A stretch of DNA of 63,715 nucleotides, counting the filler, from Octopus bimaculoides (lineage: Eukaryota), in assembly GCF_001194135.2 (NCBI RefSeq). It is 8 parts of 8 records of this genome, joined end to end, with 100 filler letters (N's around TTAATTAATTAA, not from the genome) between each part and the next. Parts side by side here need not be neighbours in the genome. Positions count along the whole stretch, not along the records: positions 7,786 to 26,773 come from NC_069006.1; 7 more parts are not named here. One strand, given 5' to 3'. The translations under genes were made by a program, and so were the position numbers. Below are positions 7,786-27,149 of the stretch, piece after piece; within the stretch, counting starts at the first letter, position 1; each line of letters opens with the position of its first letter. The notes below the pieces were generated by a model, which worked only from the letters and a program-made list of their open reading frames with translations, had not been told where the DNA came from and did no database searches.

Positions 7786-8105
7786 GGGGGGGGGAGAAAA
7801 AGATATTTTATATGACACACTCTACCAGTATCCCAACTTTGAAAGTGTTTCGTTAAGAAAACAAGTGGTGCCCGTCAATTTAGAAAGATCAGTAGTGTGA
7901 GATGAGCAAACACATACATACTTTCACACACACACACACACACACTCACACACACACACACACACATACACACACACACATACAAACGTACACACATACG
8001 CGCACACACATGCACATGCAATACATATGTCTGCATACGTATGTATTAATCAATACATGTAACTCTTAAGTGTGGAGTATCTTTTTCTTTCACTTGTCCA
8101 CACAC

Positions 8106-8152
<47 letters not shown>

Positions 8153-8824: not shown

Positions 8825-8836
8825 TATATTGAGTGT

Positions 8837-8867
<31 letters not shown>

Positions 8868-9210
8868 GATGATGATGAAGATGATGATGATGATGATTAT
8901 GATGATGATGATTATGATGATGATGATGAAGATGAGGAGGAGGAGGAGGAGGATGACAACAACGACGACAATGATGATGCCAATGGTTGTTTTTGTTGTT
9001 GTTGATGACGACGACGACGACGACGACGACGATGATGATTATGATGATGATGATGATGATGAAGAAAACGACGACGAAAACGATAACAACGACGATTGTG
9101 ATGGTAATTGTTTTTGTTCTTGTTGCTGCTGCTGATGATGAAGACGATGATGATATTTTCAATGGTGACAGTAGTTTTTTTTATTATTATTGTCATTGTT
9201 GATGAAGTGG
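8825..9210. repeat. Compound (GAT/GAC/GAG)n trinucleotide microsatellite field
   Basis: Seen directly. Similar fields at 5858-5982, 26874-27235, 28455-28860, 31780-31900 and 53810-53935, and dinucleotide fields at 1555-1740, 26490-26773 and 30197-31305. Confidence 0.95.
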
Positions 9211-10082
9211 ATGATAAGCAGACCTATTTATTTATGATCAATAGTATACCAGACATAACGTTCTTATCATTTTGTCCCACTCTTCTAATATTACTCCATT
9301 CAATGCTGTGACAGATAACGTTTGATTTAAAGCCAGTCACCAAAAAGCCTGATTCTTGTTGTAGTTTGGAGGCTTGTGTGCCTCAATGGCTCTAAGAGCT
9401 ATTCCAGCGGAGAGCAAGCTCCTCATAGAGTCTTCGATGTCCGTCGTCAGCCCCGTCGCATGACCTTTAGAGGCTCCTGCAACTTTTTGTTTCGAGACCC
9501 CCATCCCTTCAATCAAAATTCGTAATCTATGTAAGGTTTAATCAAATTTTGAAAATGATAAACAAAAGTTGTTGAGGAAAAATAGAAATACAAAAGAAAA
9601 CAACAACAAAAAACAAACTCACAAATGACTGGGATTCAAATAGTTTTCGTGTTAATTCAAATAACAGGGAAAGAACCGAAGAAACTTTATTATTCATGTA
9701 CACACACACACACACACATAGATAGATAGATAGATAGATAGGTATCTGAAGAAGCTAAATCAGATTAGTTAAACAAAAGTTCTCATCAACCGACAACATT
9801 CCAGCGACTGAATCCGGTTAGCCATATTGTTAGTTTCTTATCTGACTAGTTTGCCGAATGTTTAAATAAATACCTACACTTCAGTTAATTCTTTCAGATG
9901 CTATTATAAATACTAAATGTAAGTATTTTATTGCAAGGTCAAGACATTTCAATAGGTAATGAGATTCAGAGGAATACAATCTATTTATCAGTTTCATAGT
10001 CATTAAACTATTCAGCTATTCAAAACGTACCTTTGTAGTAAGACATTTGCTCCTCATCAACATGATTCCGGGTTCAGTTGTA

Positions 10083-10282
10083 CAGGGTGCGGCATAAATA
10101 CCTCCCACATTTGAAAGGAAAAAGAAACAACATTTATGAAAAATTAATTTTACTGTTGTTTAAACAAAGGGTTACAGTTTTTGTTCATTAGCTAAATGAA
10201 AACATCATTGGCACTTGCATATGATCGTTAGCAACACATAGGTGAAAGTTTAAAATGTGGGAGGTATTTCTGCCGCACCCTG
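10083..10282 (+). mobile_element. Tc1/mariner-type MITE, 200 bp, nested in a family-A SINE
   Basis: 30-bp TIRs (CAGGGTGCGGCATAAATACCTCCCACATTT, 1 mismatch) with TA duplication at 10081-82 and 10283-84. Confidence 0.88.
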
Positions 10283-11563
10283 TACCTTGATGAAGTGCCT
10301 TCTTCTATAGCTCGCCGGGGCCGACCAAGGTCTTGTGAGTGGATTTGAGAAATGGAAACTGAAAGAAACCCCATCGTAGATATTCTTTTAGTCTTTTTCT
10401 TGCTTCAGTCATTTGACTGCAGCCATGCTGGAGCAGCGCCTTAAAGGGGTTTTAGTCGAAGAAATCGACCTCAGGACTTATACTTTGTTAGCGTAGTGCT
10501 TATCCTATCTCTTTTGTCTGTTTTGCCGAACCGCTGGGTTACGGGGACATAAACACACCTGCCTTGGTTGTCAAGTAATGGCAGGGGGACAAACACACAA
10601 ATATATATATACATATATATATATATATANNNNNNNNNNNNNNNNNNNNNNNNNNNNNNNNNNNNNNNNNNNNNNNNNNNNNNNNNNNNNNNNNNNNNNN
10701 NNNNNNNNNNNNNNNNNNNNNNNNNNNNNNNNNNNNNNNNNNNNNNNNNNNNNNNNNNNNNNNNNNNNNNNNNNNNNNNNNNNNNNNNNNNNNNNNNNNN
10801 NNNNNNNNNNNNNNNNNNNNNNNNNNNNNNNNNNNNNNNNNNNNNNNNNNNNNNNNNNNNNNNNNNNNNNNNNNNNNNNNNNNNNNNNNNNNNNNNNNNN
10901 NNNNNNNNNNNNNNNNNNNNNNNNNNNNNNNNNNNNNNNNNNNNNNNNNNNNNNNNNNNNNNNNNNNNNNNNNNNNNNNNNNNNNNNNNNNNNNNNNNNN
11001 NNNNNNNNNNNNNNNNNNNNNNNNNNNNNNNNNNNNNNNNNNNNNNNNNNTATATATATATATATTCAGTTTTAATTTATTTTGTTAAGTGTCCATGTAT
11101 GAAACTCTGGTCCCACGAGTCATTTTTATAACTTTCTACTTACTAAGAAATAATGAAGTATTAATTCTTTGTTTCTTTTTCTTTCTTTTTTGGGAACTGT
11201 TAATCTCGAAGTACATAAAGCTGTAGATAATACACTTTTGAATAAAAAAAAATCGAAGGCTACCTGTGGGATTTGATCCCACACCTCCGGTAGACACAAC
11301 AGGCGACCAATCATTGGACGTCAGCAATGATATATTAATTTCACATCTTGTCCTTTTGTTCTCTATCTCTATAAACCACATATAATAACACTGAAGCAAT
11401 CCATAACCACGATAACAAACATGTTGCTTGAGTACGCCAACAAATTGTATTATTTGCTATTCAAACCTGAAAGAGAATCTTCTTTCAATTAAGTTACCAA
11501 ATAATATTAATGTACTTCGCATCTTCCATACCTAACAGTGTTAACCGTGTTTTGTTCATGACA

Positions 11564-11587
11564 TGACGTCAATACTGAGCAACCAAT
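11564..11587 (+). promoter_or_regulatory. Putative XBP1 proximal promoter: palindromic CRE (TGACGTCA, 11564-11571) and CCAAT box (11583-11587)
   Basis: Motifs about 200-225 bp upstream of the XBP1 ATG in unique non-repeat sequence. Function and TSS are inferred. Confidence 0.5.
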
Positions 11588-11787
11588 CAAATCGTTTTGT
11601 TCACCACTGTTTCCCCCACTTCTTGTTTACGTTATTTCTGTTCGTTCTCAGTTTACTCCAAGAAGCAGAACAAGTAACATCAGATCAACATCATACTGGA
11701 CTGGAAAGAGTGTTTAAAGATTATTATACATGCTAGTTGATTTATTTAAATAAATCATCTTTTACTGGTTGTCTTATATCAACAAAG

Positions 11788-12248
11788 ATGACAGCAATAG
11801 CCGAGTTTCAGAAACCCGATACGTTAATTATAACGACCAACGGAGGCAGAAGTACTGTTCGACGTGCTGCCATAGTGGCAACATCGGCCACGAATGGTGT
11901 CGCGCAACACAGACCAGCGACATCTGTGATCACTGTGAAACCCATAGTGAAAACAGCCCCAAACGTTTGTAAAATTCAGTCGAACGTGACCGGCCTATTC
12001 ACCACCAGTCTGCTATCGCCTAAGCAACAGCAAACACAACAGCAACAAGTGCAATCACAAACAAGACTGCAACAGCAGACGGAGAAGAATATCGTCCTGG
12101 GTTCACATAGCGAAAATATGAACGTATTCCGATTAACATCTACCGCTGTTGCAGACGATGAAGACGCCAGTTCGATCGGCAGTGACGGAGCACCTCGTAA
12201 AAGACGAAGGCTAACACATCTGAGTCCCGAAGAGAAGATACAACGGAG
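11788..12248 (+). CDS. XBP1: XBP1 coding exon 1 (N-terminal region to start of basic region; ends phase 2)
   Basis: ATG at 11788 (aaagATGa). Encodes ...GAPRKRRRLTHLSPEEKIQR(R), the XBP1/HAC1 pre-basic motif. Donor AG|GTAAAA at 12249. Joins in frame to exon 2 (AG+G = Arg). Confidence 0.93.
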
Positions 12249-12305
12249 GTAAAAATTAATCTTTCACGTCTTGGCTTTTATTAATTTTTAAGGGATGATG
12301 CAATC

Positions 12306-12363
<58 letters not shown>

Positions 12364-14033
12364 GTATATATATATATATATATATGAAAGAAATTGTATA
12401 GTGCTGAAGTGCACTATCTATCTATCTATCTATCATCTGTCGATCGATCGATCATTAGACTTGTGTGATATGTGGTTTATTGATTACGACATATAACCAG
12501 TAACTCCATATGTCCTGTTATATTTCAAAAGGATCCATATGTGACGAGCAAATGCCTTAATTATTCTGGTGATCCTTCCATTCCGCTCACATATAAATAA
12601 TATGTGGGTGTATACATGCACGCACACACACACACACACACACATATGAGGGTGAAAATCTGAGCGAAAGCTATTCCTAGAAGGCCTAGCTAGTGGAATA
12701 GGCATTTACGCTGTTTAAGTTCCTGTTTCATTCTCCAAAGAGGAACATCTGATCTTGTGTGTGCGTGTGTGCGTCGCAGGGAAGACTTGTCTCTATTTCA
12801 CCATTTAAACAGGAACAATACAATCTTGTTTGTGTGACGAAGGAGAGACATTATTTTCTTGACACGTTGAAAGCCTTGATTGTTCTTATATAGCCACATT
12901 AACTATTTCAAGGACGACCACCTTCCTCTCTTAGATTTATAAAATTACTTGGTCCACTTCCCACGGTTAAAAGAAAGTATTTATTTGGGTGTAGCTATGT
13001 TACATGTTTGGAATCATCATCATCATTTTCGTTATCATACAATATGTTGTTAGAAAATATTAACCATATCGGTAATTAAGTTAAGAAATTATTTAATCCT
13101 GTATCAACGAAATATTTTATTTATTCCCTTGTCTATACTTATGATATTACTACCGTATTATAGAAAAATTCACCTTTTTATTTCATCTTAAACCTGTCGT
13201 CACCAAATGATTTTTAAAATATGATTAATCACCATTGATCGTTACATTTTACTAATGTGAACTAATGTACCTACATACATACACAAATATTAAAATTGAT
13301 TTATTAATCAGTGGATGAACTATTTAATCTTTAGTCCCTAGTCTTCTTCATAGCCAAGTCATCCCCCTACACGAACCACGAACGTCTCGCCTTGTGTCTT
13401 TATTCACGATGCTATTTACTGTATTATAGTAAGATTGACCTTCTTTTTACTCCATCTAAAACCTATCGTCCACAAATATGGTTTTAAATTAGAGTAATCG
13501 CCATTGATCGTTACATTTTAGCAGAGTGAACTAACTAATTGAGGGTGAATCATGAAATATGCCAAGAATCTTTTGCCTGATGTTGCTCCACGCCCCCAGC
13601 TGTTCAACATCGTGGGCCTTTTATTTATGCAGAGCTGTTTAGTTATAAAATGGTGGAGACTGCTGTTTTTGACGCAGCTGAACAGATGTTACTTCCTGAT
13701 CGTGTACGATATTAGGAAATGGGTTACTCACACAAACCACATACGTACACTCCCCTACATGCGTGTGAACACTCACATTGTATACGTATAATATGTCACC
13801 AGTTAAATGGTGGTACAAGACACATACATAAACTTGTATGTATGTATGTATTATTCGAAGTATAAATATATTGATTATTATACACGTATTCGGAGAATAC
13901 ACACGCACACACACACTTGTTCATGCGCCGACACATGTTTGCATGTAGATCACGGATTTGATGATCGCTCCAAGCTGAGATTTTGAATTTCAGCCGTTGT
14001 TTGAAACGGATATGGAATAGCCAGAGAGAAAAC

Positions 14034-14106
<73 letters not shown>

Positions 14107-14160
14107 ACACACACATCTATCTATCTACAAATTTACGCGTCTCTATCTCTCTCTATATAC

Positions 14161-14196
<36 letters not shown>

Positions 14197-16063
14197 NNNN
14201 NNNNNNNNNNNNNNNNNNNNNNNNNNNNNNNNNNNNNNNNNNNNNNNNNNNNNNNNNNNNNNNNNNNNNNNNNNNNNNNNNNNNNNNNNNNNNNNNNNNN
14301 NNNNNNNNNNNNNNNNNNNNNNNNNNNNNNNNNNNNNNNNNNNNNNNNNNNNNNAACAGTAGCAGCACGGAATCGTGAAGTATATTTTCCACCTAAATGT
14401 GGCGAACCCATAAAGAAGCCCCAGGAAGACATCTCCTCCAGCTGGCTAACGACACACTGTCTGTGTCGTTATTGAATTCGGGACACACCCACTGGGGTAG
14501 GTATGCCGGTACATGCTTACGGAGCTAACCTATCCGGTTACTACTACAGTATAGTGTCACTATAATGATGATGCTCGCTGCTGGGTTAGTTGGTGTGAAA
14601 TGCTGTCGTGTTGGTGTCTTAGTCAAGTCGCTTTATTAGCACCGATATAGTACAAACTTACACCAAGCACAACGACCGACACCGCCATCATGAACCTCCG
14701 CCGCCTTCATCACAACTATTACTATCCCCCTCTCACCACCATCACCGTCACGACTACTAGTCCCCACCATCGCCACCAGAACCATCACTGCTATTCCATG
14801 CACTACCACCATTTCTACTATCCCCACCGTCATCTCTACTTCTGCTATTCCTTGCCACCACCGCTTCTATCTCCCCCACCATCACCAGCATCACCATTTG
14901 TATTATCCCTACGACTGCTGTCACTACTTCTACTATCCCCACCACCACCACCACCACTACAACATTTTAGCAGTCTGGCAATATTCCCGTTTCATACATT
15001 GTACCAGGCACGAACGAACGAACTAATTAGGGAACTTTGACGTGGTCGTTTGTCTTGCTAGAAATAGTAACCAAATCTTCAAATCACGTTATTTCTATCT
15101 TTTAAATAACAAATGGGTAAATTGGGATCTGTCCTGGAAATAATATACCTGGGGGAAAAATAAAATAATAATAATAAAGTGGTTGACTGGAATGTCTGAA
15201 CTGAAACTAAAAGCATTTTAGAACAGCAAAATTTCCAGACCAACCTGACAGACAGGACTGCACGTTTTACAACAGACGATTAGGAAAGCAAACGGCAGCT
15301 TTGAAACAATTAACCAACATTCTTAACACACACACACACTCTCTCTCTCTTTTTCTCAATCATTCACCCCCCCCCTTTCTCACTCAATCCCCTTCTTTCT
15401 CTATCTCTCTCTCTCACACGTTTCATATTCTCCATTCTGTAAAACCTGTTCACAAGAGACGGTTACATATATATATAGCTATCTTATATCAGGTGCCCTC
15501 ACAGTGTCTCCTATTTTTCATTACTTCATTGAATTTTTTTTTATGAGAATTTTTTAGAGCTGGTGTAATAAGTGCTTGTACAACGAGTTATATAAACCCA
15601 CGCTACCGTGGAAAACGGATGTTAAATGATCTATCTATCTATTCATCTATCTATCTATTCATCTATCTATCTATTCATCTATCTATCTATTCATCTATCT
15701 ATCTATTCATCTATCTATATGTGTGTGTGTGTAATGGTTGTTATATATTTTTCTTTGTAGTTTAATTTGAGCTACAGCTGTTTCCAATAGCCATAGTTTC
15801 GTTGTTTGATAGGTTTATTCAATCGACCCATTTGATCGGTTGGAAAAAATTGAACGACATTAGAACAATTAATGCTACTTTCGTCAGAGCCACTTCTGGT
15901 TATAACAAAGCAAGAATGGTGACGAACTATAAACCTCGGGGACCTTGCCACAAAAATACGTGGGGTTCTTCAGCTAATCTAAACAAAATTGTTAGGCTGC
16001 TGTACTAACAGAAAGTTTATTCGGTATTTTGCCCTGATTGATAAACCCTCACTAATAACTCTT

Positions 16064-16108
<45 letters not shown>

Positions 16109-16804
16109 NNNNNNNNNNNNNNNNNNNNNNNNNNNNNNNNNNNNNNNNNNNNNNNNNNNNNNNNNNNNNNNNNNNNNNNNNNNNNNNNNNNNNNNNNNNN
16201 NNNNNNNNNNNNNNNNNNNNNNNNNNNNNNNNNNNNNNNNNNNNNNNNNNNNNNNNNNNNNNNNNNNNNNNNNNNNNNNNNNNNNNNNNNNNNNNNNNNN
16301 NNNNNNNNNNNNNNNNNNNNNNNNNNNNNNNNNNNNNNNNCCATATGGCATTTATACTCACCCCTCCCCCTTTTTGTTTTTACTTCATATCGATCCAGCT
16401 TTGGCCTCTTCACATACGTGTGTTTGTGTGCGATAAGCCTTTCGAGAAATTCATAAGATCGAGTAGTAAACAACTTATCCAGTTTTATTAACCCACGCAC
16501 ACACATAACGTAGGCTTGGCTAGATTGTCGTATATATTTGTGTGAAAATCATTGCCTGACTACGCTCATTTTAATGTATATAATATATATTAAGAAAGAA
16601 TGCCATATAGGCAGGCATTGCACACCATTAAAACAGCTGGGAAAGAGTGACAGATAAAATATCTATATCGAAAGAATGCCATATATATATATATATATAT
16701 GGATTATTGTAATATAATGTAATATAAAGTTGAAGCAAATTAACACCAAATATACAGTGCGTGTGTTTTTATTGGCTAAACTGGCAATATGACCATCCCC
16801 AAGT

Positions 16805-16847
<43 letters not shown>

Positions 16848-17654
16848 NNNNNNNNNNNNNNNNNNNNNNNNNNNNNNNNNNNNNNNNNNNNNNNNNNNNN
16901 NNNNNNNNNNNNNNNNNNNNNNNNNNNNNNNNNNNNNNNNNNNNNNNNNNNNNNNNNNNNNNNNNNNNNNNNNNNNNNNNNNNNNNNNNNNNNNNNNNNN
17001 NNNNNNNNNNNNNNNNNNNNNNNNNNNNNNNNNNNNNNNNNNNNNNNNNNNNNNNNNNNNNNNNNNNNNNNNNNNNNNNNNNNNNNNNNNNNNNNNNNNN
17101 NNNNNNNNNNNNNNNNNNNNNNNNNNNNNNNNNNNNNNNNNNNNNNNNNNNNNNNNNNNNNNNNNNNNNNNNNNNNNNNNNNNNNNNNNNNNNNNNNNNN
17201 NNNNNNNNNNNNNNNNNNNNNNNNNNNNNNNNNNNNNNNNNNNNNNNNNNNNNNNNNNNNNNNNNNNNNNNNNNNNNNNNNNNNNNNNNNNNNNNNNNNN
17301 NNNNNNNNNNNNNNNNNNNNNNNNNNNNNNNNNNNNNNNNNNNNNNNNNNNNNNNNNNNNNNNNNNNNNNNNNNNNNNNNNNNNNNNNNNNNNNNNNNNN
17401 NNNNNNNNNNNNNNNNNNNNNNNNNNNNNNNNNNNNNNNNNNNNNNNNNNNNNNNNNNNNNNNNNNNNNNNNNNNNNNNNNNNNNNNNNNNNNNNNNNNN
17501 NNNNNNNNNNNNNNNNNNNNNNNNNNNNNNNNNNNNNNNCACGTTGGGATAGTGTGGTTCGTAGCAGCTCATCTTGCCGTGGAATGTCAACGGTCACAGA
17601 TGATTCGCTGACAATGCCACTGCCGATTATCGTGTGCAGATGTAGTCTAGGTTT

Positions 17655-17812
17655 GACATCATCATCATCGTCATCATTTAACGTCTGTTGTCAATGCTGG
17701 CATGGGTCGGTCGGTTTGACCAGAGCTGGCAAGCTGGGGGGCTGCACCAGACTCCTGTCTGATTTGGCATGGTTTCTACGACTGGATGCCCTTCCCTAGC
17801 GCCAACCATTTT
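17655..17812 (-). mobile_element. RTE-like LINE/SINE 3' end with (GAT)n tail
   Basis: catcatcat...tttaacgtc...catgctggcatggg motif, also at 19218-19400, 24008-24100 and 5960-6130. Confidence 0.55.
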
Positions 17813-18416
17813 ATAGTAGCTTCATCGAAGCCTCTAATATGAAGCTATGGAATGTTATTCGGGCACTCGACAAATGAGTTCACTGCATCTTATAGCTGAA
17901 AAAATCTGAAATCAATATGGAAGACAATACGATCCCTTTGCTCTCTATATTAACGACTGTTTTATCCCAGAATGCGTGTTGGAAGATGTTTAAGCTGTAC
18001 GCAAATAAACATACGTAAGGAAAGGTCGATGATCTAGAATCTAGGTCATCTCCATGAGATCTGTGTGAACAAGTCTTTGTTGACCAAGAGGGGCAGAATT
18101 GTATGCACTTATCAAGCATATACTGGTTTTCGCAGCTGATCAAAGTAGTTTCTTCCCGTCTCTCTTGAGTTTTCTCTCTTTCTCATCTTTTTCTTCCCAC
18201 CTGTCTCTTCTCGTTTTCTCTCACGCAACCTTCTTCTTTCTCTCTCACCTGTTTTCTCTCGATTTCTCTCTCTCTTCCTCCCATATTTTCTTTTACCCTT
18301 TCCTCCTACGTCTCCCTCTCTCTTCCATGCTTCATTTTTCTTTCTTTCTCTTAATCCTCTCTCAAATTCTATTTCTGTCGCACATTTTTCTTCTTCACTT
18401 GCCCTTTCTTTTTACT

Positions 18417-18454
<38 letters not shown>

Positions 18455-19066
18455 CCTTTCTTCTTCTCTCTTTCTTCCTTCATTTTGTCTTTCTTTTTCT
18501 CATTTCTATCCTTTCTATTACACATACATTCTTTTAACTCTCCCTCCCACTGCTTGCCTCTCATACACACTCTCTCTCACCATCATACACACACTCTCCC
18601 ACCACCCCTCTAAACCTCACTCCAGTACTCTCTTTCACCCTCTCTTTATCACATGCACTCAAACGCACTTTTCCTGTCTCTCACCTTCACCCCCAACACT
18701 CTCTCCCTCCTATTCAAAACAGAAACCTCAAGTAACTTGCTAAATTTAACTCACTCAAAACAAACTAGATCACCCAGCGGATAAAAACCACTATCGATTG
18801 GTCTTCTTCCCCAGTTATCTTCTTTATTATTTCAACCTGATAAAAATAATAAACATAGGTCTATACTTTGGTCAGTTAAGACAGCCAGGCTATTTATTCC
18901 ACCCTTTTACCAGTGATCTGTTCGTTTTTTATTCAGTGTGTCTGTGTGTATCTCCTGACTAATGTCAACTTTTGTGATGATTGGTTCAATGAGTTATAGG
19001 TAACTTGAGGTTCTAATGCACTTTGGCATCTTGTATATGTAATTGTGTTCTTGTGTGTGTGTATGT

Positions 19067-19104
<38 letters not shown>

Positions 19105-19654
19105 TGACCAGCGTCAACTTTCGTGATGGTTGGTTCAAACAATTACGATAGGTAACATGAGAAGGTTTGGTACTAATGCACTTTGGCATCTTGTGTATAT
19201 TCGTGATAATAATTACCATCATCGTTTAACATCCGTTTTCCATGCTGGCATGGGTTGGATGGCTTGAAAGAAACTGGTAAGGTCAGGCGGCCACATCAGG
19301 TTCCATAGTCTGTTTTTGCCTTGGTTTCTATGGCTGGATGTCCTTCTTAATGCCAACTACTTTACAGAGTGTACTGGGTGCTTTTTACATAGTACCATCA
19401 CCAGTGCTTTTACGTGTGTGTATGCATAGACATACACAAACACACATACATAGATATACACATATGGAAAAAATTATGTGGGTTCCAAATTCTTTAATTA
19501 AAATGGAATCAAAACTATCCACTTATAAGAGTTAAATATCTGGCATTTGCCAATGAAACACTGAGGTCATCCTGGCCCCCAAAATTGCTGCCCTTGTGGA
19601 AAAATGTGAAACTATTGTTATTATATTTTAAATATTAATATTATTATCTTTTAG

Positions 19655-20152
19655 GAAATTAAAGAACAGAGTTGCAGCCCAAACAGCCCGCGATCGGAAG
19701 AAAGCACAAATGTCTGACATGGAAATAGCCATTGATAAACTACAGAATGAAAACAAAAAATTGCTTCAACAGAACCTGATGCTACAGAAAAAGACTGACA
19801 CACTGGTCTGCGAAAACGCTGAGCTCCGCGAGAGACTGGGCCAGTTAGAGAACGGAGAATGCAACCACTTGTCCACAACAACAACTACAACCACATCGTC
19901 AGGAACAACATCCACATCATCACCATTATCATCATCATCATCATCATCGTTATCATCCAGCACATGTAACTACAACAACAACAACAGCATTGCTAACAGT
20001 AGTCTCTGCAAGAGTGAAAGCTTATCGTCGCCGGTGAAAACAGAATCAAAATGCCTACGGTCCGCAGTACCAATTGTTTCTCTGCCGCAGAAACACATTT
20101 TGATGCTGTTTCACTTGATGATACGTTGCAGCTTTTTGGCAGTAATGATGAA
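19655..20152 (+). CDS. XBP1: XBP1 coding exon 2 (bZIP, T/S/N low-complexity linker, IRE1 splice region)
   Basis: Acceptor ttattatcttttag| at 19654. Reads RKLKNRVAAQTARDRKKAQMSDMEIAIDKLQNENKKLLQQNLMLQKKTDTLVCENAELRERLG, a typical XBP1 bZIP. Donor GTAAGT at 20153. Confidence 0.96.
20065..20084 (+). other. XBP1: Predicted IRE1-excised unconventional intron, 20 nt (CAGTACCAATTGTTTCTCTG)
   Basis: 5' hairpin GGT[CCG^CAGT]ACC and 3' hairpin TGTTTCT[CTG^CCGC]AGAAACA have 7-nt CNGNNGN loops. They are closed by a long stem (20041-20053 with 20096-20108). Removal shifts the frame into the long exon-3 ORF. Confidence 0.88.
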
Positions 20153-20199
20153 GTAAGTTTAATCTTTAATCTTTAATCTTTTGTCTTTTTAATCTTTAA

Positions 20200-20480
20200 A
20201 CCTTTAGCATTCAGATTACTCTGTCAAATGTAATGCTTATTCACATCATCACTATTTAATGTCCGTTAAACTGACCATGTCCAGCCTAGATATTCTGCCA
20301 GTTTGATGTTCAGAGAGGTCAGGTCTGGCCTCTCACACCTATCCTGCAGTGTCATTCTAAATATAAGCAATAACATAATGAAAATCTTCGCTACAAGATA
20401 ATGCATGATTAATTCAAAATAATGTGAATAAAGAATAAATAAGCATTACGTTTGAGTGAGTTATCCGAATGCGAAAATAA
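20200..20480 (+). mobile_element. piggyBac-like MITE in XBP1 intron 2 (related copy 20607-20760)
   Basis: About 40-bp imperfect TIRs (tttagcattcagattactctgtcaaatgtaatgcttatt), TTAA at the left end. The second copy starts TTAA|CCCATTAGCA. Confidence 0.55.
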
Positions 20481-20797
20481 GTTTTTGTCCAACTCCTGCC
20501 AGCATGGCGAAAAGAGACCTCAAAATGATGGCAAAAAAATGTTTTTTAGTGAGTTAAACACTTGATGTGAGTTGATATGTTTTCTAGGCTCCAAAGACTT
20601 GATTAACCCATTAGCAATCTAATTACTCTGTGAAATGTAAGGTCTCTTTATTTACATTGTCTTAGATTGATCATGCTTAGAGATTTTGATGCTGTGATTT
20701 TAGAGATTTTCGATTTCTGAAACAATCTATAATAACCTGATAATGATCTTATGGCTAAGTTTAATTGTTTTTTTTTTTGTTTTTTTTTTTTCTCCAG

Positions 20798-20978
20798 CCT
20801 AGCAAATGGTGGAAATTTCTGGATGAAGTCTGCAATTCAGAATCTAAAAACCCAATCTCTTCACAGTCAGTTACAGATTCTTCGTGTCTTGGAGCTGCTG
20901 AGCTTCTCGCAAAAGAGAATTCCAATTCCATGGTGGGGACCGCAACAACACAACTGGACTCCCTCGATGAACTTATAA
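20798..20978 (+). CDS. XBP1: XBP1 exon 3, unspliced (XBP1u) frame: C-terminus with arrest-peptide-like motif
   Basis: AA+C = Asn join. Ends ...IPWWGPQQHNWTPSMNL*, resembling human XBP1u WGRHQPSWKPLMN*. Total 380 codons. Confidence 0.85.
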
Positions 20979-21634
20979 AATCTGACCATGTCTATGTCAA
21001 GCCTTCCCCATCTCCGTCTCCAGCTTCTGACAGTGGACCAAAGTCCCTGATGGAAGTTTGTGATATCTTGCCATGTGATGCTGCTGATGAAGGCGTGTTT
21101 GTAGACGAGGAAGCAATAGTGTCAGCAGTCAGCTCCACTGTAATTGTTCCTGACATTTCTAACATTGCCACTCAAGAATATGACGATATCAAAGACAACG
21201 ATGCCATCACTGACAACAGCAGCAGCAACATCGATGATGATAGTTATGATTTTGACCCTCTGGCCTTACTGCAAGATATCCTGCAAGAGTCGGTTGACAG
21301 CCAAGAAGGCAAAGAAACAAACGATATTCTACAACTGGCAGATTTAGAGCAGCTTGATACCTCTGATCTCGCTGAAGAAAACAACCCCATCTCCTCCCTC
21401 ATGCTCGATATGAAACTGAGGAAATCCTGTGACTCTACTGAAAGTGAAATGAAAATTCCCGTTGAAACAACTTATATGGATCAATTCAGTGACTCTGCCA
21501 GTGACTCTGGTATAAATAGTGAACCTAGCAATCCTGGGTCCCCTTACCAGGATCAGTTGACGACAATCCCTTTTAATGACATGGATCCAATGGATGACTG
21601 CATGTTGCCAGAGATATTTCCTTGTCTCGTTTGA
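20798..21634 (+). CDS. XBP1: XBP1 exon 3, spliced (XBP1s) frame: acidic transactivation region
   Basis: Acceptor (t)n-ctccag| at 20797. Phase-0 join after GAA in the IRE1-spliced frame. Contains LDELIKSDHVYVKP and terminal EIFPCLV*, matching XBP1s motifs ELIRFDHxYxKP and ELFPQL. Total 592 codons. Confidence 0.92.
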   Translation, partial: PSKWWKFLDEVCNSESKNPISSQSVTDSSCLGAAELLAKENSNSMVGTATTQLDSLDELIKSDHVYVKPSPSPSPASDSGPKSLMEVCDILPCDAADEGVFVDEEAIVSAVSSTVIVPDISNIATQEYDDIKDNDAITDNSSSNIDDDSYDFDPLALLQDILQESVDSQEGKETNDILQLADLEQLDTSDLAEENNPISSLMLDMKLRKSCDSTESEMKIPVETTYMDQFSDSASDSGINSEPSNPGSPYQDQLTTIPFNDMDPMDDCMLPEIFPCLV

Positions 21635-22691
21635 GCAGTGATATCTCTTTCCCTCTCTTCCTTTTGATCGAGCCATTGCTTGTGAGTGGCTGGATTATTC
21701 TGACCGGTTCCCCTTTGAGCTTATGTTCTCCAAGAACTAAAGCTAAAGCAGAACTGAATGATATTAATTACTTAATCACATCTAGTGCTGATTAAGCTGT
21801 ACTAATAGCTTAGCCAACTGAGGCAGTCAGCTTATCTTTTGCTAACCACTTCTCTGTTAAGTTGTTAAGCATCGTCTAGATACTACTCTACACCAAGGAC
21901 TAAGGCTAAGCAAAGTTTTTACTGACCTAATCATATTTAGAACTATCTCGTATTCACAAAGCTGTATCGTAAATTATTGAAGCTTGGCCTTTCGATGCAG
22001 TCAACCTATCTCTTCATTTCCTAAGACTTGCAGCATCCTGGTGCATTGTTTGGAATGAGACGAGTCTCTTATTTTACATAAAATGAGGGTGAAAGTGGTT
22101 CTCACTGTAGCCCCTATGCCTTCCAGCAGTCACCACCATCACTTCCACCATGTCGTTCTTGGTAGTTGAAGTAGTCAAGTAGTTAAAATATTAAGATAAA
22201 AATCTCAAAAACTTGTCTGACATCAATGATTTCTACAATTTAGATATATCTTATGAGAGTAATTTCAAATTTTCTCACACTCACACAAAAAAGCAAATAT
22301 AATTTGACTTCTTTATAACCTCCTTTACATTTATTCATTTTCTTTTTCTATTATTTCTTTTTGCCTCTTACACCTTCTCTAATCACTATCATTGAAAGCT
22401 TACATTTAATACTTAGGTTAAAAAATTAAACTTAGCATATCACTACAGCCATATCAATGCCCATATATCAAAATATTTATACATACATATATATATAATC
22501 ATAAATATATAGGGATTGACAGTAACCTGCTTCTCCAACATACTGAGAATTCAGAAATAGCAGTCAAAGAACTACTGATTTCAAAACTACAAATTATTAC
22601 TCCAGATTGATAGCGATATTTTTGATACACACAGAACAAAAAACAGTAGAGAAGAGTAAAAAAACCACCTGCCTTTAGTTACCTGCATATC

Positions 22692-22753
<62 letters not shown>

Positions 22754-23132
22754 TATGTATATATTTGTCTCTTTAGTTCAAGATGGAGTCCGTTCACCTT
22801 TCATCTTACATTCCTTGACATTAGCGGTACTGTTTATGTTTCTATTTTTACTTTTTCTAGTTACTTGAGGCAGATTGGTAGAATCCATAGAGTGGCCCTG
22901 ACAAAATGCTTTGCAGTATTTAGTTATGTCTCTAGTTATGTTCTGAGTTCCAGTCCTGTCCATGGTCAATAGAATAAGATACTCAACTCCTTGGGAACTG
23001 ATACAATCAGATTCTCCTTTCATTACCCCCTCCACCCTTCTCCTATCTCTAGACTTGTGCAAAAAGTAGAAATTACTTCACAGCAAAAATAGCATACAGT
23101 TTCATGAGCTTATATCATATATATATATAGAT

Positions 23133-23317
23133 CAGAGCTCTGCAGCTGTTATGTTTAACATACTGGTGTGTCATGATACGATGCTAGGAGTGCCGTAGTG
23201 TAACCTGAATATAATTTTTTCTCCTATACATTTAGTTATATTTTTAGTTCAGGTGTGCCACCGAATTTTGAAAAGAATATATATGTACCGCAAGTGAAAA
23301 AAGGTTCCGGAACACTG
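23133..23317 (+). mobile_element. hAT-type MITE, 185 bp
   Basis: CAG...CTG termini with imperfect TIR and a perfect 8-bp TSD ATATAGAT (23125-23132, 23318-23325). Confidence 0.8.
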
Positions 23318-23738
23318 ATATAGATGTATGCCTGTCTATCTGTCTATATGTTTATGTATAGTGTGAAAATATGATTTATTTTTATATAGTCATTATCTCG
23401 ATATCATACTTCATTTCATATATTTAGCTCCTATGATTTAAAAAGATATTTATTTTATTATGTTTTATTTATCAAAAGTTTGTCTTGTTTCTTTTTTTCC
23501 TTCTATCAAAATATTTCTTTCATATCTAATGTAAAATAGTATTATTTCTAGAATATTCTTATATCCAAGAGCACTGTTTTTAACTGAGTCACTGTAAATA
23601 ACATTGTTATTCATATGAAAAATGATTTTATAATTCCATATCATACTCTTTACAATTGTAAAACAAAAACAAAACTCCAAAATCAACATAGTTGTTTTCT
23701 TCAATCATGAGGTTTGAAAACCTAAATCTAGGTTGTTT

Positions 23739-23744
23739 AATAAA
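23739..23744 (+). terminator. Candidate XBP1 polyadenylation signal AATAAA (3' UTR about 2.1 kb)
   Basis: AATAAA followed by a T/GT-rich tract (23770-23835). No transcript evidence. Confidence 0.35.
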
Positions 23745-24122
23745 TTTGTTTCTGAAATAAGAAATACATTGTTGTTATTTTATTTTAATTTTTTAGTTTT
23801 TACTTTTGTGTACTTTTTTATACTTTTTTTTTTTAATGTAAATCCAGTTCCCAAGATACACTTAGTTTCATCTTAGATCTTTTTTTTTATTGGAGCTACA
23901 GGACATGAACCAACCTGCTTGCAGCAAAGTATGGCTGAACTTGGGTCCTTGGGGAAAGAATGTAACTCCTTAATGCATATGCTACAAATAATAATAATGA
24001 TAATAATCATCATCATTGTTTAATGTCTGCCTTCCATGCTGGCATGTGTGGGATGGTTTGACATGTGCTGACCAGGCAGGAGCCGGCACCAGACTTTTGT
24101 GCTCCTAGCGATGATGTTGTTG

Positions 24123-24388
24123 TTGGCACTCCGTCGAGGGTTCCAGTTGATCCGATCAACGAAACAGCCTGCTCGTGAAATTAACTTGCTGAGCACTCCA
24201 CAGACACGTGTACCCTTAACGTAGTTCTCGGGGACATTCAGCGTGACACAGAGTGTGACAAGGCTGACCCTTTGAATTACAGGCACAACAGAAACAGAAA
24301 GTAAGAGCGAGAGAAAGTTGTGGTGAAAGAGTACAGCAGGGTTCACCACCATCCCCTGCCGGAGCCTCGTGGAGCTTTAGGTGTTTTC
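24123..24388 (-). mobile_element. SINE family C, truncated by assembly gap
   Basis: High identity to 58953-59334. Confidence 0.8.
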
Positions 24389-24728
24389 NNNNNNNNNNNN
24401 NNNNNNNNNNNNNNNNNNNNNNNNNNNNNNNNNNNNNNNNNNNNNNNNNNNNNNNNNNNNNNNNNNNNNNNNNNNNNNNNNNNNNNNNNNNNNNNNNNNN
24501 NNNNNNNNNNNNNNNNNNNNNNNNNNNNNNNNNNNNNNNNNNNNNNNNNNNNNNNNNNNNNNNNNNNNNNNNNNNNNNNNNNNNNNNNNNNNNNNNNNNN
24601 NNNNNNNNNNNNNNNNNNNNNNNNNNNNNNNNNNNNNNNNNNNNNNNNNNNNNNNNNNNNNCTAATAGTTCATTAATATATCTCATTGAAAGTTAAGAGA
24701 AAAAACTCAATAAAGGATGTAACGTTAC

Positions 24729-24773
24729 CGTGTTTCCACAAAGGCCTGAATAAGGTAAATCAATTTTTCTTAA
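24729..24773 (-). CDS. Possible isolated 45-nt exon (LRKIDLPYSGLCGNT, phase 0-0)
   Basis: Acceptor gttttatgttttag, donor gtaacg, single open frame. Not linked to any model. Confidence 0.25.
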
Positions 24774-25856
24774 CTAAAACATAAAACTTTATACAACTTT
24801 CTCAAGCAAACCGTATATTTCTAGGGATTTTCACCAGTCTTCCTTTGCTTCAGACATAATTTCTGCTGTTCTCTGTTCTATTTTGATTTATTTTTTTCCT
24901 TCATCGTATTCTTTCTGTTAATTATATTATTTTTTTGTATAAATAGATAATATATAACAGTTACCGAACGTGAGTGTATATATACAATCGCCACATTTTA
25001 TTAATATATACATTTTTCGTCACCAGCCGACAAGACGGCTTTACCGAAGTCCCTTCGTTGTATACATATACAATTGTGTCCCCACCGACTTTGTTTCTTC
25101 ATAACTTACGGAAAAATGGATAATTTTTAATGGAATTTGCTACAAGTATCTTTCAGACGGTGTAGATTACGATTATATTGGTGGGAAAAAAAAAGAAGAG
25201 CAATTGGTGGATGCAGAGCCAACTTTCTCTGTTGGATGGTTTGACATGGGTATAGAAAAGAACAATGGAGTCTGCTGGGATTTTACTAAACAAAATTTTA
25301 TTCTTTTCCTACACAAAAACATGAATGTTGTTGCTACGAACGATAAAACGTCAATTTTTTTTATTATTGGTGTAGTCGTAGCAGCAGATAAAGTTGCTTA
25401 TTGTCTGCTAACTTCTGTCGTTCATCTTCCACTGCTCGTGGCCTTGTGTTGTACGCTGTTGGTCAACCCCTGGTGTCTGTCAATTCTTTCTCTGTTGCAC
25501 CCGCAAAGCTCTACGTCTGGTGGGTCCCGACAAACTGAATTTAAACTGATCGATAGGCTCAGAAGGAAGCGTGCTCAAAGAAAAGATTGTCGCTGGAGCC
25601 TGTTTGACTCGAAGTCCTGATTGGTCTGATTTTGTGGACAATATTCTAGCGAATCGTGATATCGGGCGATTGCTGAATATTCCGGCTACACATAGATCCG
25701 GGTTTTTAGAATAAGTACATATCGCGGTTTAAGTGCTGCAAAGAGGAAATGCAAAATTGACTATGGCAGGATTTGAACTCAGTATGTCCAGCTCTGTAAC
25801 TAAATGCCAAAATAAGGTATTTTGTCTGACACTTATGATTCTGTGAATTTACCACT

Positions 25857-25887
<31 letters not shown>

Positions 25888-26109
25888 CAATATAATCCTT
25901 TCTATTATAGGCACAAGGGCTGAAATTTTGGAGGAGGAAGGCAAGTCGATTACATTGACCCCAGTGCATAACTGGTACTTATTTCGTTGACCCTGAAAGG
26001 ATGAAAGGCAAAGTTGACCTCATCTGAATTTGAACTCGGAACGTATCGATAGGCAAAATACTGCTAAGCATTTCGTCCAGAGGGCTAATGATTCTGCCAG
26101 TTTGCCACC

Positions 26110-26144
<35 letters not shown>

Positions 26145-26605
26145 CATAATCATAATCATAATCATAATCAAAATCAAAATGGTAATATCAGAGGATTCAG
26201 ACTTTCTGCAAATATGTTCCCTTGAACACAAGACTATTCACACATACATAGATACACTATTTTATTGTTTTTAGTTTAATCATGTATTGTTTAGAAAAAA
26301 AATAATAAATAAATAAACAAACATGGAATAAGAAAATTAAAAAGAAAAAGAATAATTTTTTGAAACATTTTATATTTTTCATTTTGTTTCTTTTTTTTTT
26401 TCTTTAATTTTTGTTTTATATAATATTTTTAAAATTGAAAAAAAGTAAAAGGAAAAAAATTCAAAAATCTCCATGAGTATGCATTTTGTTATATGTGTGT
26501 GTGTGTGTATGTATGTATATATATGGATACATATATATATATATATATATGTATGTGTATATATATATATATGTATGTGTATATATATGTGTATATATAT
26601 ATGTG

Positions 26606-26637
<32 letters not shown>

Positions 26638-27149
26638 TGTATGTGTATATATATATATGTATGTGTATATATATATATATGTATGTGTATATATATATGT
26701 ATGTGTATATATATATGTATGTGTATATATATATGTATGTGTATATATATATATATATATATGTATGTGTATANNNNNNNNNNNNNNNNNNNNNNNNNNN
26801 NNNNNNNNNNNNNNNNNTTAATTAATTAANNNNNNNNNNNNNNNNNNNNNNNNNNNNNNNNNNNNNNNNNNNNATGATGATGGCTATGATCATGAGGAGA
26901 AGGAGGAGCTGGAGTAGAAGGATAATAATGGTAGTAGATAGTGGACGTTGTGGTTGTAGTGGTGGTGGTGGTGATGAATATGAAGTGGAAGGAGGAGAGA
27001 AGAGTATCCGGTGTGTATTGATAACGATGAAGATGTTATGATGATGATGACGATGAGGCTGATGTTGTTGATACTGATTATTCTAATAATGAGGCGAATA
27101 GCATGTTCACGATGATGATAATGATGATGATGTTGATGATGATGACGAC

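What the first reader, a model, noticed from the sequence alone, without database searches (positions are those of the whole stretch)
20085..20978. XBP1u keeps a hydrophobic HR2-like segment and a ribosome arrest-peptide-like C-terminus in a dual-coding region
Seen: the unspliced frame reads HILMLFHLMIRCSFLAVMMNL (hydrophobic), then about 57 residues ending WGPQQHNWTPSMNL*. The 13-mer at 20934-20972 matches human WGRHQPSWKPLMN at 7 of 13 positions (W,G,Q,W,P,M,N). The same bases encode LDSLDELIK in the spliced frame. Established: mammalian XBP1u pauses the ribosome through this peptide so that HR2 targets the mRNA to the ER via SRP. Inference: pausing-based mRNA targeting is conserved in this lophotrochozoan, with one extra C-terminal Leu.
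Basis: partly seen in the sequence, partly recalled or inferred. Interest (0 to 1): 0.7.

Follow-up and report, generated by a model that had tools for sequence, protein, structure and literature searches.

The report
Octopus XBP1u pause peptide, conserved
This is the ordinary XBP1 stress-response gene of Octopus bimaculoides: its unspliced reading frame keeps the hydrophobic segment and the C-terminal ribosome-pausing peptide known from mammals and flies, and these are selected in their own frame, so it is a well-supported new example of a known mechanism, not a new one.

Summary
The piece is the Octopus bimaculoides XBP1 gene. It has twin IRE1 hairpins around a 20-nt intron (20065-20084). 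The dual-coding stretch is 20085-20152 plus 20798-20978. The u-frame reads HILMLFHLMIRCSFLAVMM, then 58 residues on, WWGPQQHNWTPSMNL*. The same bases give MVGTATTQLDSLDELIK in the spliced frame.

The tail W-G-x2-Q-x2-W-x-P-x-M-N is present in 86 u-form XBP1 proteins, from molluscs, an annelid, a nemertean, a starfish, sharks and mammals. In a nine-species codon alignment, the s-frame wobble sites inside the motif are about 4-fold less variable than control wobble sites (0.14 vs 0.57, p=6e-6). The most variable class is u-frame third positions, so the u-frame is selected as a peptide. A hydrophobic HR2 lies 39-67 residues upstream in all 85 u-forms measured.

Pausing, SRP targeting and IRE1 splicing were not observed in octopus. 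No spliced reads appeared in 15 RNA runs, and vertebrate Leu259 is Ser here.

The mechanism, its conservation in Drosophila and XBP1 dual coding are already published. This is a new member of a known kind, of low to moderate interest.

The parts
11788..12248 (+). XBP1 coding exon 1 (Met1 to ...SPEEKIQR, donor GTAAAA at 12249)
   Evidence: ORF scan and exon joining reproduce the NCBI protein P0001 exactly.
19655..20152 (+). XBP1 coding exon 2. It holds the bZIP basic region (NRVAAQTARDRKK at 19665-19703), the leucine zipper, a Ser/Thr-rich linker, the IRE1 site and HR2.
   Evidence: Translation. RNA-seq depth is 100-300. Pfam bZIP_1/bZIP_2 are recorded for P0001.
20041..20108 (+). IRE1 substrate element: an outer stem enclosing twin hairpins. 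The 5' hairpin is 20059-20071 with loop CCG|CAGU. The 3' hairpin is 20075-20095 with loop CUG|CCGC.
   Evidence: Rfam RF04247 'bZIP non canonical Hac1/Xbp1 intron' matches over the full model at 28.7 bits (below the gathering score of 41), E=7e-4 on 151 nt. MFE is -19.5 kcal/mol, z=-2.7.
20065..20084 (+). Predicted 20-nt IRE1 (unconventional) intron, CAGUACCAAUUGUUUCUCUG. Its removal shifts the frame from u to s.
   Evidence: The loop cleavage positions. The same 20-nt spacing occurs in 4 other cephalopods, Patella, Aplysia, Tubulanus and Asterias, against 26 nt in shark and bear. The Argonauta s-form protein reads RSAAETR. Excision was not observed in octopus reads.
20085..20152 (+). First part of the dual-coding region. 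The u-frame reads PQKHILMLFHLMIRCSFLAVMM(N). The s-frame reads AETHFDAVSLDDTLQLFGSNDE.
20094..20150 (+). HR2-like hydrophobic segment of XBP1u (residues 301-319, HILMLFHLMIRCSFLAVMM)
   Evidence: It is the only strongly hydrophobic 19-residue window in the protein (Kyte-Doolittle 1.80; human HR2 scores 1.62). It lies 58 residues before the predicted P-site Met (human 53). T occupies 13 of 19 s-frame wobble positions against a 24.8% background, p=8e-5.
20153..20797 (+). Conventional spliceosomal intron (GT..AG) inside the dual-coding region
   Evidence: 316 spanning reads in three RNA runs join 20152 to 20798.
20798..20978 (+). Second part of the dual-coding region: the u-frame linker, the arrest peptide and the stop
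   Evidence: The mRNA matches the genome with no A>G editing at >=1%.
20931..20972 (+). Arrest-peptide-like motif WWGPQQHNWTPSMN (residues 365-378). The predicted P-site Met377 codon is 20967-20969 and the A-site Asn378 codon is 20970-20972.
   Evidence: W(-11), G(-10), Q(-7) and W(-4) are present in 86/86 tails and P(-2) in 84/86. The variability has u-frame periodicity. The same five residues and the same pause position are reported for fly, fish and mammals (PMC8152447).
20973..20978 (+). Extra Leu379 codon (TTA) and the XBP1u stop codon (TAA)
   Evidence: The extra residue follows from the s-frame Leu codon CTT followed by ATA-A. Other taxa have none, L or S.
20930..21004 (+). Conserved s-frame motif MVGTATTQLDSLDELIKSDHVYVKP of XBP1s. 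It overlaps the arrest peptide and runs past the u stop.
   Evidence: Alignment of 12 species. Human XBP1s has VGTSSAKLEAINELIRFDHIYTKP (P0054).
20979..21634 (+). s-frame-only C-terminal (activation) part of XBP1s, with stop TGA at 21632-21634. XBP1s is 591 aa.
   Evidence: The C-terminus ...LPEIFPCLV matches the conserved ELFPQLISV-type end of other XBP1s proteins.

Best explanation
The region is the C-terminal, unspliced-frame-specific part of the Octopus bimaculoides XBP1 orthologue.

The proposed mechanism is as follows. In the unspliced mRNA, ribosomes read through the IRE1 site into the u-frame. They make a moderately hydrophobic helix-like segment (HR2, residues 301-319). Fifty-eight residues later they reach WWGPQQHNWTPSM-N. 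By homology with the human and Drosophila peptides, this sequence folds into a turn in the exit tunnel. It slows accommodation of the next tRNA, with Met377 in the P site and the Asn378 codon in the A site. At that moment HR2 has just left the tunnel and can be captured by SRP or the ER membrane. That brings the mRNA, with its twin IRE1 hairpins about 900 nt upstream in the pre-mRNA and about 250 nt upstream in the mRNA, next to IRE1. Excision of the 20-nt intron then switches translation to the s-frame and yields the 591-aa activator XBP1s.

Shown here:
- gene identity and exon structure;
- the IRE1 hairpins;
- the presence and geometry of HR2 and the motif;
- purifying selection acting on the u-frame peptide itself;
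- the unspliced mRNA as the dominant form in the sampled tissues.

Inferred only: pausing, SRP/ER targeting and IRE1 cleavage in octopus.
For: Identity: 100% match to NCBI XBP1 isoform X1 of O. bimaculoides.

IRE1 element: a full-length match to Rfam RF04247 and twin 7-nt CNG|CNG loops. The 20-nt spacing is shared across non-vertebrates.

Motif conservation: W, G, Q and W are invariant in 86/86 u-form tails, P in 84/86 and N in 81/86. The taxa include molluscs, Owenia, Tubulanus, Asterias, sharks and mammals.

Selection on the u-frame (9 species):
- s-frame wobble sites inside the motif have a mean pairwise difference of 0.14, against 0.57 at control wobble sites. That is 7/13 invariant against 1/22; Mann-Whitney p=6e-6, Fisher p=0.002.
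- The most variable class is u3 (0.40), then u2 (0.14) and u1 (0.06).
- Octopus versus Argonauta in the last 15 codons shows 0 changes at u1, 1 at u2 and 6 at u3.
- s-frame residues under P-[HQ]-Q vary freely among S, T, A and P (all NCN codons). That is what u-frame first-position C imposes.

Stop position: every u-ORF stops 0-1 codon after Asn.

HR2:
- It is present in 85/85 u-forms, ending a median 55 residues (range 39-67) before Asn. Octopus scores KD 1.80 with a gap of 58; human scores 1.62 with a gap of 53.
- s-wobble T is enriched in HR2, p=8e-5.

Literature:
- Human pause with Met260 in the P site (PMC6624018).
- A ribosome-profiling peak at the homologous position in Drosophila, with the same five conserved residues (PMC8152447).
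- Deleting HR2 plus the C-terminal region in Drosophila lowers splicing from about 40% to 23% (PMC4138184).
Against: No functional data exist for octopus.

No read or contig lacking the 20 nt was seen in 3 raw-read RNA runs (depth 150-220 each) or in 12 contig runs. IRE1 splicing at this site is therefore inferred from structure and from the Argonauta gene model only.

The Rfam score is below the family's gathering threshold (28.7 vs 41).

Human Leu259 contacts C4398 and is described as essential for stalling. It is Ser in octopus and in all 80 non-vertebrate tails.

In the human S255A reporter, the single changes L259S, H252Q, P254H and A255N give fFL=1, meaning no measurable arrest under strong pulling force. 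L246I and F245P strengthen arrest. That assay also scores the wild-type human Ser255 as 1, so it cannot decide the matter.

The region upstream of WWG (human Y241, P244, L246) is not conserved in invertebrates.

Two of 88 u-form tails are degenerate: P0039 and P0063.
Confidence: 0.8

Rival explanations
1. By-product of s-frame constraint. On this view only the XBP1s motif VGxxxxxLxxxxELIxxDHxYxKP is selected, and the u-frame tryptophans, proline and Met-Asn merely fall out of the codons it uses.
For: The s-frame motif is itself strongly conserved. It continues for 9-10 codons beyond the u stop, where no u-frame exists. The second half of the block is conserved in both frames (u W-x-P-S-M-N, s L-E/D-x-L/I-N/D-E-L).
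Against: Fourfold-degenerate s-frame wobble sites are invariant or nearly so across phyla. These are Val GTG/CTG, Gly GGG and the NCC/NCA codons. In contrast, wobble sites of the equally conserved bZIP basic region and of the downstream FDHxYxK block are saturated (0.14 vs 0.57, p=6e-6). The s-frame amino acids at codons 4-7 change freely (T, P, A, S, L) while the u-frame residues stay fixed. Variability has u-frame periodicity.
Confidence: 0.03
2. The u-frame tail is selected as a peptide, but for a role of the finished XBP1u protein rather than for ribosome pausing. Candidate roles are a C-terminal degron or a regulator and escort of XBP1s/ATF6.
For: XBP1u protein is reported to bind and regulate the product of the other frame (PMC1868773). 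Sequence conservation alone cannot distinguish a nascent-chain function from a mature-protein function. Ser replaces the mechanistically important Leu259.
Against: The conserved residues are exactly those framing the tunnel turn in the human cryo-EM structure: W249, G250, Q253, W256 and P258. They always sit at a fixed distance from a stop placed 0-1 codon after Asn. Drosophila, which shares only these five residues, shows a ribosome-profiling peak at the same place. The HR2-to-motif spacing of 39-67 residues is kept although the linker sequence is not. That pattern fits a tunnel-length ruler. The two roles are not mutually exclusive.
Confidence: 0.12
3. Constraint at the RNA level: a structured or protein/miRNA-bound element in the mRNA, not a peptide.
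For: A run of about 45 nt is highly conserved at the nucleotide level across phyla.
Against: RNAalifold on 10 species finds essentially no consensus structure: -2.1 kcal/mol, with a covariation term of +0.48 that does not support it. The sites that do vary are every third base, the u-frame wobble. That is the signature of coding selection.
Confidence: 0.03

Closest known systems
Human/mouse XBP1u arrest peptide plus HR2 (Yanagitani 2009/2011; Kanda 2016; Shanmuganathan 2019, PMC6624018)
   Same: Orthologous gene. Both have a bZIP domain followed by IRE1 twin hairpins, and a u-frame hydrophobic segment 53-58 residues before a C-terminal W-G-x2-Q-x2-W-x-P-x-M-N followed by a stop. The overlap with the XBP1s motif ...L-x4-ELI-x-x-DH-x-Y-x-KP is the same, and the frame relation is the same (u = s shifted by one base).
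   Different: The IRE1 intron is 20 nt rather than 26. Six of the 13 motif positions differ (R251P, H252Q, P254H, S255N, K257T, L259S), including Leu259, which contacts the peptidyl-transferase centre in human. The upstream half of the human peptide (Y241-Q248) is not conserved. There is an extra Trp before WG and an extra Leu after Asn. The N-terminal region is much longer (379 vs 261 aa). There is no experimental evidence in octopus.
Drosophila Xbp1-unspliced HR2 and C-terminal region (Coelho 2014, PMC4138184; Chyzynska 2021, PMC8152447)
   Same: This is an invertebrate XBP1u with HR2 and the five core residues W(-11), G(-10), Q(-7), W(-4) and P(-2). Published data show a ribosome-profiling peak at the homologous codon and reduced splicing when the tail is deleted.
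   Different: [quoted passage not shown] Octopus keeps Met-Asn as in vertebrates and has Asn at -5. The fly intron is 23 nt (my own knowledge, not checked here).
XBP1 as a classical dual-coding gene (Chung 2007, PMC1868773, which cites an earlier analysis of XBP1 overlapping frames)
   Same: Two overlapping frames in one mRNA are switched by IRE1, and both are under selection. That paper describes the dual-coding region as conserved from worms to mammals.
   Different: Those analyses were centred on mammals. The codon-level comparison here spans lophotrochozoans, an echinoderm and vertebrates. It shows which frame dominates in which part of the 14-codon block.
Plant bZIP60u ribosome stalling (PMC11077094)
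   Same: The logic is the same: a hydrophobic segment, then a stall site downstream, next to an IRE1-spliced intron.
   Different: The arrest sequence is unrelated, so this is an analogue and not a homologue of the motif.

Membership tests
XBP1 (bZIP transcription factor, IRE1 substrate) | Orthology of the bZIP protein to XBP1 | tested here: met
   100% identity to NCBI XBP1 isoform X1 of O. bimaculoides. The best hits are XBP1 of molluscs, annelid, echinoderm and vertebrates. The basic region NRVAAQTARDRKK is invariant.
XBP1 (bZIP transcription factor, IRE1 substrate) | Twin stem-loops with CNG|CNG 7-nt loops flanking a short intron whose length is 2 mod 3 | tested here: met
   Loops CCG|CAGU and CUG|CCGC with a 20-nt intron. 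Full-length match to Rfam RF04247, E=7e-4, but 28.7 bits against a gathering score of 41. The arrangement is conserved in 8 other non-vertebrate sequences.
XBP1 (bZIP transcription factor, IRE1 substrate) | The intron is actually excised in vivo | tested here: inconclusive
   No 20-nt-skip reads or contigs in 15 RNA runs. The tissues were probably unstressed and contigs drop rare variants. Only the Argonauta hians gene model (RSAAETR) implies the spliced form.
XBP1u translational arrest peptide | Core residues W(-11), G(-10), Q(-7), W(-4), P(-2) relative to the P-site residue, at the extreme C-terminus of the u-frame | tested here: met
   W366, G367, Q370, W373 and P375, then S376, M377, N378, L379 and the stop. 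The residue set is as defined in PMC8152447.
XBP1u translational arrest peptide | Human-defined critical residues outside the core (L246, R251, H252, L259) | tested here: not met
   Octopus has I, P, Q and S at these positions. In the human reporter, H252Q and L259S give fFL=1, R251P weakens arrest (0.61 vs 0.46) and L246I strengthens it. Ser at -1 is the rule in non-vertebrates (80/86).
XBP1u translational arrest peptide | Peptide-level (u-frame) purifying selection rather than hitch-hiking on the s-frame | tested here: met
   s-wobble variability is 0.14 vs 0.57 in controls, p=6e-6. The order is u3 > u2 > u1. There is no conserved RNA structure.
XBP1u translational arrest peptide | A ribosome pause at the Met/Asn codons | not testable with these tools
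   No ribosome-profiling data for octopus were available. Only an unexplained RNA-seq depth step at 20941-20956 was seen.
HR2-mediated co-translational ER targeting | A hydrophobic segment about 50 residues upstream of the pause site, so that it is exposed when the ribosome pauses | tested here: met
   KD(19)=1.80 at residues 301-319, 58 residues before Met377. Human is 1.62 and 53. All 85 u-forms measured have such a segment 39-67 residues upstream.
HR2-mediated co-translational ER targeting | SRP/Sec61-dependent membrane association of the mRNA-ribosome-nascent chain complex | not testable with these tools
   This needs biochemistry. It is known only for mammals (PMC6624018, PMC4456659).

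The most novel reading that the evidence does not exclude
The non-vertebrate form of the arrest peptide, WWG[PS][HQ]Qxx W[NT]PSMN, may be the ancestral bilaterian version. It is more rigidly conserved than either the vertebrate peptide or the XBP1s motif it overlaps. Because it carries Ser instead of the PTC-contacting Leu259, it may silence the peptidyl-transferase centre in a somewhat different way from the human peptide. Pausing at this site might also leave a footprint in ordinary RNA-seq: the depth step about 30 nt upstream of the A-site codon could reflect collision-linked cleavage.
Probability: 0.2. Interest if true: 0.5.

Novelty: new member of a known kind. Interest (0 to 1): 0.25.

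Why it matters
This result extends a well-studied regulatory device to cephalopods and, in passing, to a wide spread of lophotrochozoans and an echinoderm. In that device a nascent peptide pauses its own ribosome so that its mRNA can be taken to the ER and spliced by IRE1.

The codon-level data show that the pause peptide is itself the selected object. In the first half of the overlap it dictates the sequence of the XBP1s protein, rather than the other way round.

There are two practical points. The true XBP1s of O. bimaculoides (591 aa, 20-nt intron removed) is not in the NCBI annotation, which instead lists the s-frame tail as an 'uncharacterized protein isoform X2'. RT-PCR assays of ER stress in cephalopods should expect a 20-nt size shift, not a 26-nt one.

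None of this changes the accepted picture of the unfolded protein response.

Tried and rejected
- A 23-nt IRE1 intron (20065-20087) was my first reading. I rejected it for 20 nt because of hairpin geometry, the Rfam alignment, the decapodiform 3' site CAG|CUG and the Argonauta protein.
- I searched for spliced XBP1 mRNA in octopus using 3 raw-read runs and 12 contig runs and found nothing. A protein search with a junction-spanning XBP1s query found only the Argonauta model, plus separately called s-frame tail ORFs.
- RNA editing could in principle recode the tail or its stop, which is a real possibility in cephalopods. No A>G at >=1% was seen in 20798-21040.
- A conserved RNA structure under the motif was not found.
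- I tried to use the human saturation-mutagenesis table to predict octopus arrest strength. It was uninformative, because the assay also scores wild-type human Ser255 as no arrest.
- One protein look-up (Mizuhopecten, P0097) returned no contig.
- I did not use structure prediction, the exhaustive representative search or the metagenome scan. The question was settled by the labelled genomes.
- Arthropod, nematode and cnidarian tails were not sampled here.
Full report
**What the piece is.** The usable part of the window (7786-26773) carries one gene on the + strand.
- Joining 11788-12248, 19655-20152 and 20798-20978 gives a 379-aa protein.
- That protein is 100% identical to NCBI 'X-box-binding protein 1 isoform X1 [Octopus bimaculoides]'.
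- Three raw-read RNA-seq runs of the same species cover the exons at depth 100-300. 316 reads span the conventional GT..AG intron from 20152 to 20798.
- The gene and its u-form protein are therefore real, expressed and already annotated.

**Checking the observation.**
- The u-frame reads ...LRSAVPIVSLPQK HILMLFHLMIRCSFLAVMM NL ... RIPIPW WGPQQHNWTPSMN L*.
- HILML starts at 20094. The 13-mer is at 20934-20972, the Met codon at 20967-20969 and the TAA stop at 20976-20978.
- Against the human residues 249-261, WGRHQPSWKPLMN, 7 of 13 positions match.
- In the other frame the same bases read MVGTATTQLDSLDELIKSDHVYVKP.

**The IRE1 site and the true start of the overlap.**
- The stretch 20041-20108 matches the whole Rfam model RF04247 ('bZIP non canonical Hac1/Xbp1 intron'). 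The score is 28.7 bits, below the curated threshold of 41, with E=7e-4 on 151 nt.
- It folds as an outer stem around two small hairpins. Their 7-nt loops are CCG|CAGU (20062-20068) and CUG|CCGC (20082-20088).
- Cleavage after the third loop base removes 20 nt, 20065-20084.
- I first read the 3' site three bases further on, which would give 23 nt. That version has no stem.
- The 20-nt spacing recurs in Octopus sinensis, Argonauta, two further cephalopod-like transcripts, Patella, Aplysia, Tubulanus and Asterias. Shark and bear have 26 nt.
- The Argonauta hians gene model reads ...RSAAETR..., as expected for removal of 20 nt.
- The dual-coding region is therefore 20085-20152 plus 20798-20978, or 83 codons.
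- XBP1s is 591 aa and ends at TGA 21632-21634.

**Is the u-frame tail conserved in relatives?** Yes, strikingly.
- Of the 120 best database hits, 86 are u-form proteins ending in the motif.
- Numbering from the P-site Met as 0: W(-11), G(-10), Q(-7) and W(-4) are present in 86/86. P(-2) is in 84/86, N(+1) in 81/86, S(-1) in 80/86 (Leu in the six vertebrates), M(0) in 66/86 and a second W(-12) in 80/86.
- The named sources include octopods, gastropods, bivalves, the annelid Owenia, the nemertean Tubulanus, the starfish Asterias, sharks and mammals.
- Six unlabelled transcripts (P0004-P0009, 352-377 aa) align with the octopus protein over its full length. They are probably decapodiform cephalopods, and they end WWGPHQ[HQ]NWTPSMN(L).
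- Two tails are degenerate (P0039, P0063).
- After Asn, 71 proteins stop at once, 10 add Leu and 5 add Ser.

- In this overlap, the s-frame codon positions 1, 2 and 3 are the u-frame positions 3, 1 and 2. A silent change in the s-frame therefore always hits a u-frame second position.
- I compared nine phylogenetically spread species: octopus, a decapodiform-like transcript, Patella, Aplysia, Owenia, Tubulanus, Asterias, shark and bear.
- The 13 s-frame wobble sites inside the motif have a mean pairwise difference of 0.14, and 7 are invariant.
- The 22 control wobble sites are the FDHxYxK block just downstream, where only the s-frame codes, and the invariant bZIP basic region. They have a mean of 0.57, and 1 is invariant. 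Mann-Whitney p=6e-6; Fisher p=0.002.
- Inside the motif, the most variable class is the u-frame third position (0.40), then u2 (0.14), then u1 (0.06). That is the periodicity of a peptide selected in the u-frame.
- Under u-frame P-[HQ]-Q, the s-frame amino acids wander among T, P, A, S and L. These are NCN codons forced by the u-frame's first-position C.
- In the second half of the block, both frames are conserved (u W-x-P-S-M-N, s L-E/D-x-L/I-N/D-E-L).
- Within cephalopods the picture is the same. Octopus versus Argonauta shows 0, 1 and 6 changes at u1, u2 and u3 in the last 15 codons. The linker between HR2 and the motif changes about equally at all three positions, with 8, 12 and 13 changes of 43.
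- An RNA-structure explanation finds no support: the consensus fold is -2.1 kcal/mol with no covariation support.

**HR2.**
- The octopus segment HILMLFHLMIRCSFLAVMM is the only strongly hydrophobic 19-residue window in the protein, with Kyte-Doolittle 1.80 (human HR2 scores 1.62).
- It ends 58 residues before Met377. The human gap is 53.
- All 85 u-forms measured have such a window (0.9-2.1), ending 39-67 residues (median 55) before the terminal Asn. The sequence of the linker is not conserved.
- This is what a ruler set by the length of the ribosomal tunnel would give.
- In octopus, 13 of the 19 s-frame wobble bases under HR2 are T, the base that makes u-frame second positions hydrophobic. 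The background elsewhere in the CDS is 24.8% (p=8e-5).

**What is known already.**
- The pause with Met260 in the P site, the W249-W256 turn and the roles of HR2, SRP and Sec61 are established for the human peptide (PMC6624018).
- Coelho et al. 2014 reported that HR2 and the C-terminal region are conserved in Drosophila. Deleting them lowers Xbp1 splicing from about 40% to 23%. They concluded that the mechanism is probably conserved across metazoans (PMC4138184).
- Chyzynska et al. 2021 found a ribosome-profiling peak at the homologous codon in fly, zebrafish, mouse and human. They narrowed the shared residues to exactly the five seen here (PMC8152447).
- XBP1 is a textbook dual-coding gene, described as conserved from worms to mammals (PMC1868773).
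- I found no paper on XBP1u in cephalopods.

**Caveats.**
- Nothing functional was or could be tested.
- No read or contig lacking the 20 nt was seen in three raw-read runs (depth 150-220 each) or in twelve contig runs. A protein search with a junction-spanning XBP1s query found only the Argonauta model. The tissues were presumably unstressed, and contigs drop rare variants.
- Leu259 contacts C4398 in the human structure and is described as essential for stalling. It is Ser in octopus and in all non-vertebrate tails.
- In the human S255A reporter, L259S, H252Q and P254H each abolish measurable arrest, whereas L246I and F245P strengthen it. That assay also scores the natural human Ser255 as no arrest, so it cannot settle the matter.
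- The fly result shows that pausing tolerates large differences around the P site.

**The extra Leu.** The pause is predicted before Asn is added, so Leu379 lies beyond it. The extra residue arises because the s-frame Leu codon is CTT, which gives u-frame TTA. The s-frame ATA-A that follows then supplies TAA. Species with CTA or CTG stop at once (TAA or TGA), and CTC gives Ser.

**Verdict.** The octopus sequence is an orthologous, selectively maintained XBP1u HR2 plus arrest-peptide module. I put about 0.8 on it working as in mammals and flies. It is a new member of a known kind. The gene is annotated and the mechanism is published, including for an invertebrate. Interest is low to moderate.

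Noticed in passing
window 20053-21634: NCBI's 'uncharacterized protein LOC106880675 isoform X2' (P0121, 312 aa) is the s-frame read from the unspliced mRNA. It starts at an internal ATG (20053-20055, MPTVRSTNCFSAAETHF...). It is not XBP1s. The true 591-aa XBP1s is not annotated for O. bimaculoides, and O. sinensis has the same problem (P0122).
   Followed up: partly
window 20065-20084: The IRE1 intron is 20 nt in octopus, four other cephalopod sequences, Patella, Aplysia, Tubulanus and Asterias. It appears to be 17 nt in Owenia and is 26 nt in shark and bear. All of these lengths are 2 mod 3.
   Followed up: yes
window 20941-20956: RNA-seq depth rises by 40-90% within about 15 nt in all three raw-read runs, and 27 molecules begin exactly at 20943 in one run. 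This lies 11-26 nt upstream of the predicted P-site codon and about 30 nt upstream of the A-site codon. It could be library bias or duplicates. Collision-linked cleavage is only a speculation.
   Followed up: partly
window 20166-20241 and 20390-20432 (inside the conventional intron): An inverted-repeat element has RNA depth above 100, while the rest of the intron is near 0-5. It shows 'opposite strands' read joints and many low-level A>G and T>C mismatches. It is probably a dispersed repeat expressed elsewhere, possibly edited double-stranded RNA.
   Followed up: no
window 20032: A C>T change appears in about 60% of reads of one RNA run and 0% in the other two. It turns codon CCG into CTG (Pro to Leu) in the linker just upstream of the IRE1 site. 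It is a heterozygous polymorphism.
   Followed up: partly
window 19870-19990: A Thr/Ser-rich low-complexity coding stretch (TTTTTTTSSGTTSTSSPLSSSSSSSLSSS) is built of ACA/ACC/TCA repeats. It attracts many cross-mapping reads and spurious 'goes back' joints.
   Followed up: no
window about 20816-20830: A second small island is conserved in both frames among cephalopods: u-frame FWMK over s-frame FLDEV. It appears homologous to human u-frame AFW over s-frame ILD, at the C-terminal edge of human HR2.
   Followed up: no
P0039 and P0063 (unlabelled transcripts): Two u-form XBP1 tails have a degenerate motif (WWEPQQLMLAPSMN and EKLWLNQKSLNPSKT). They may be paralogues, errors or lineages that lost the pause peptide.
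   Followed up: no
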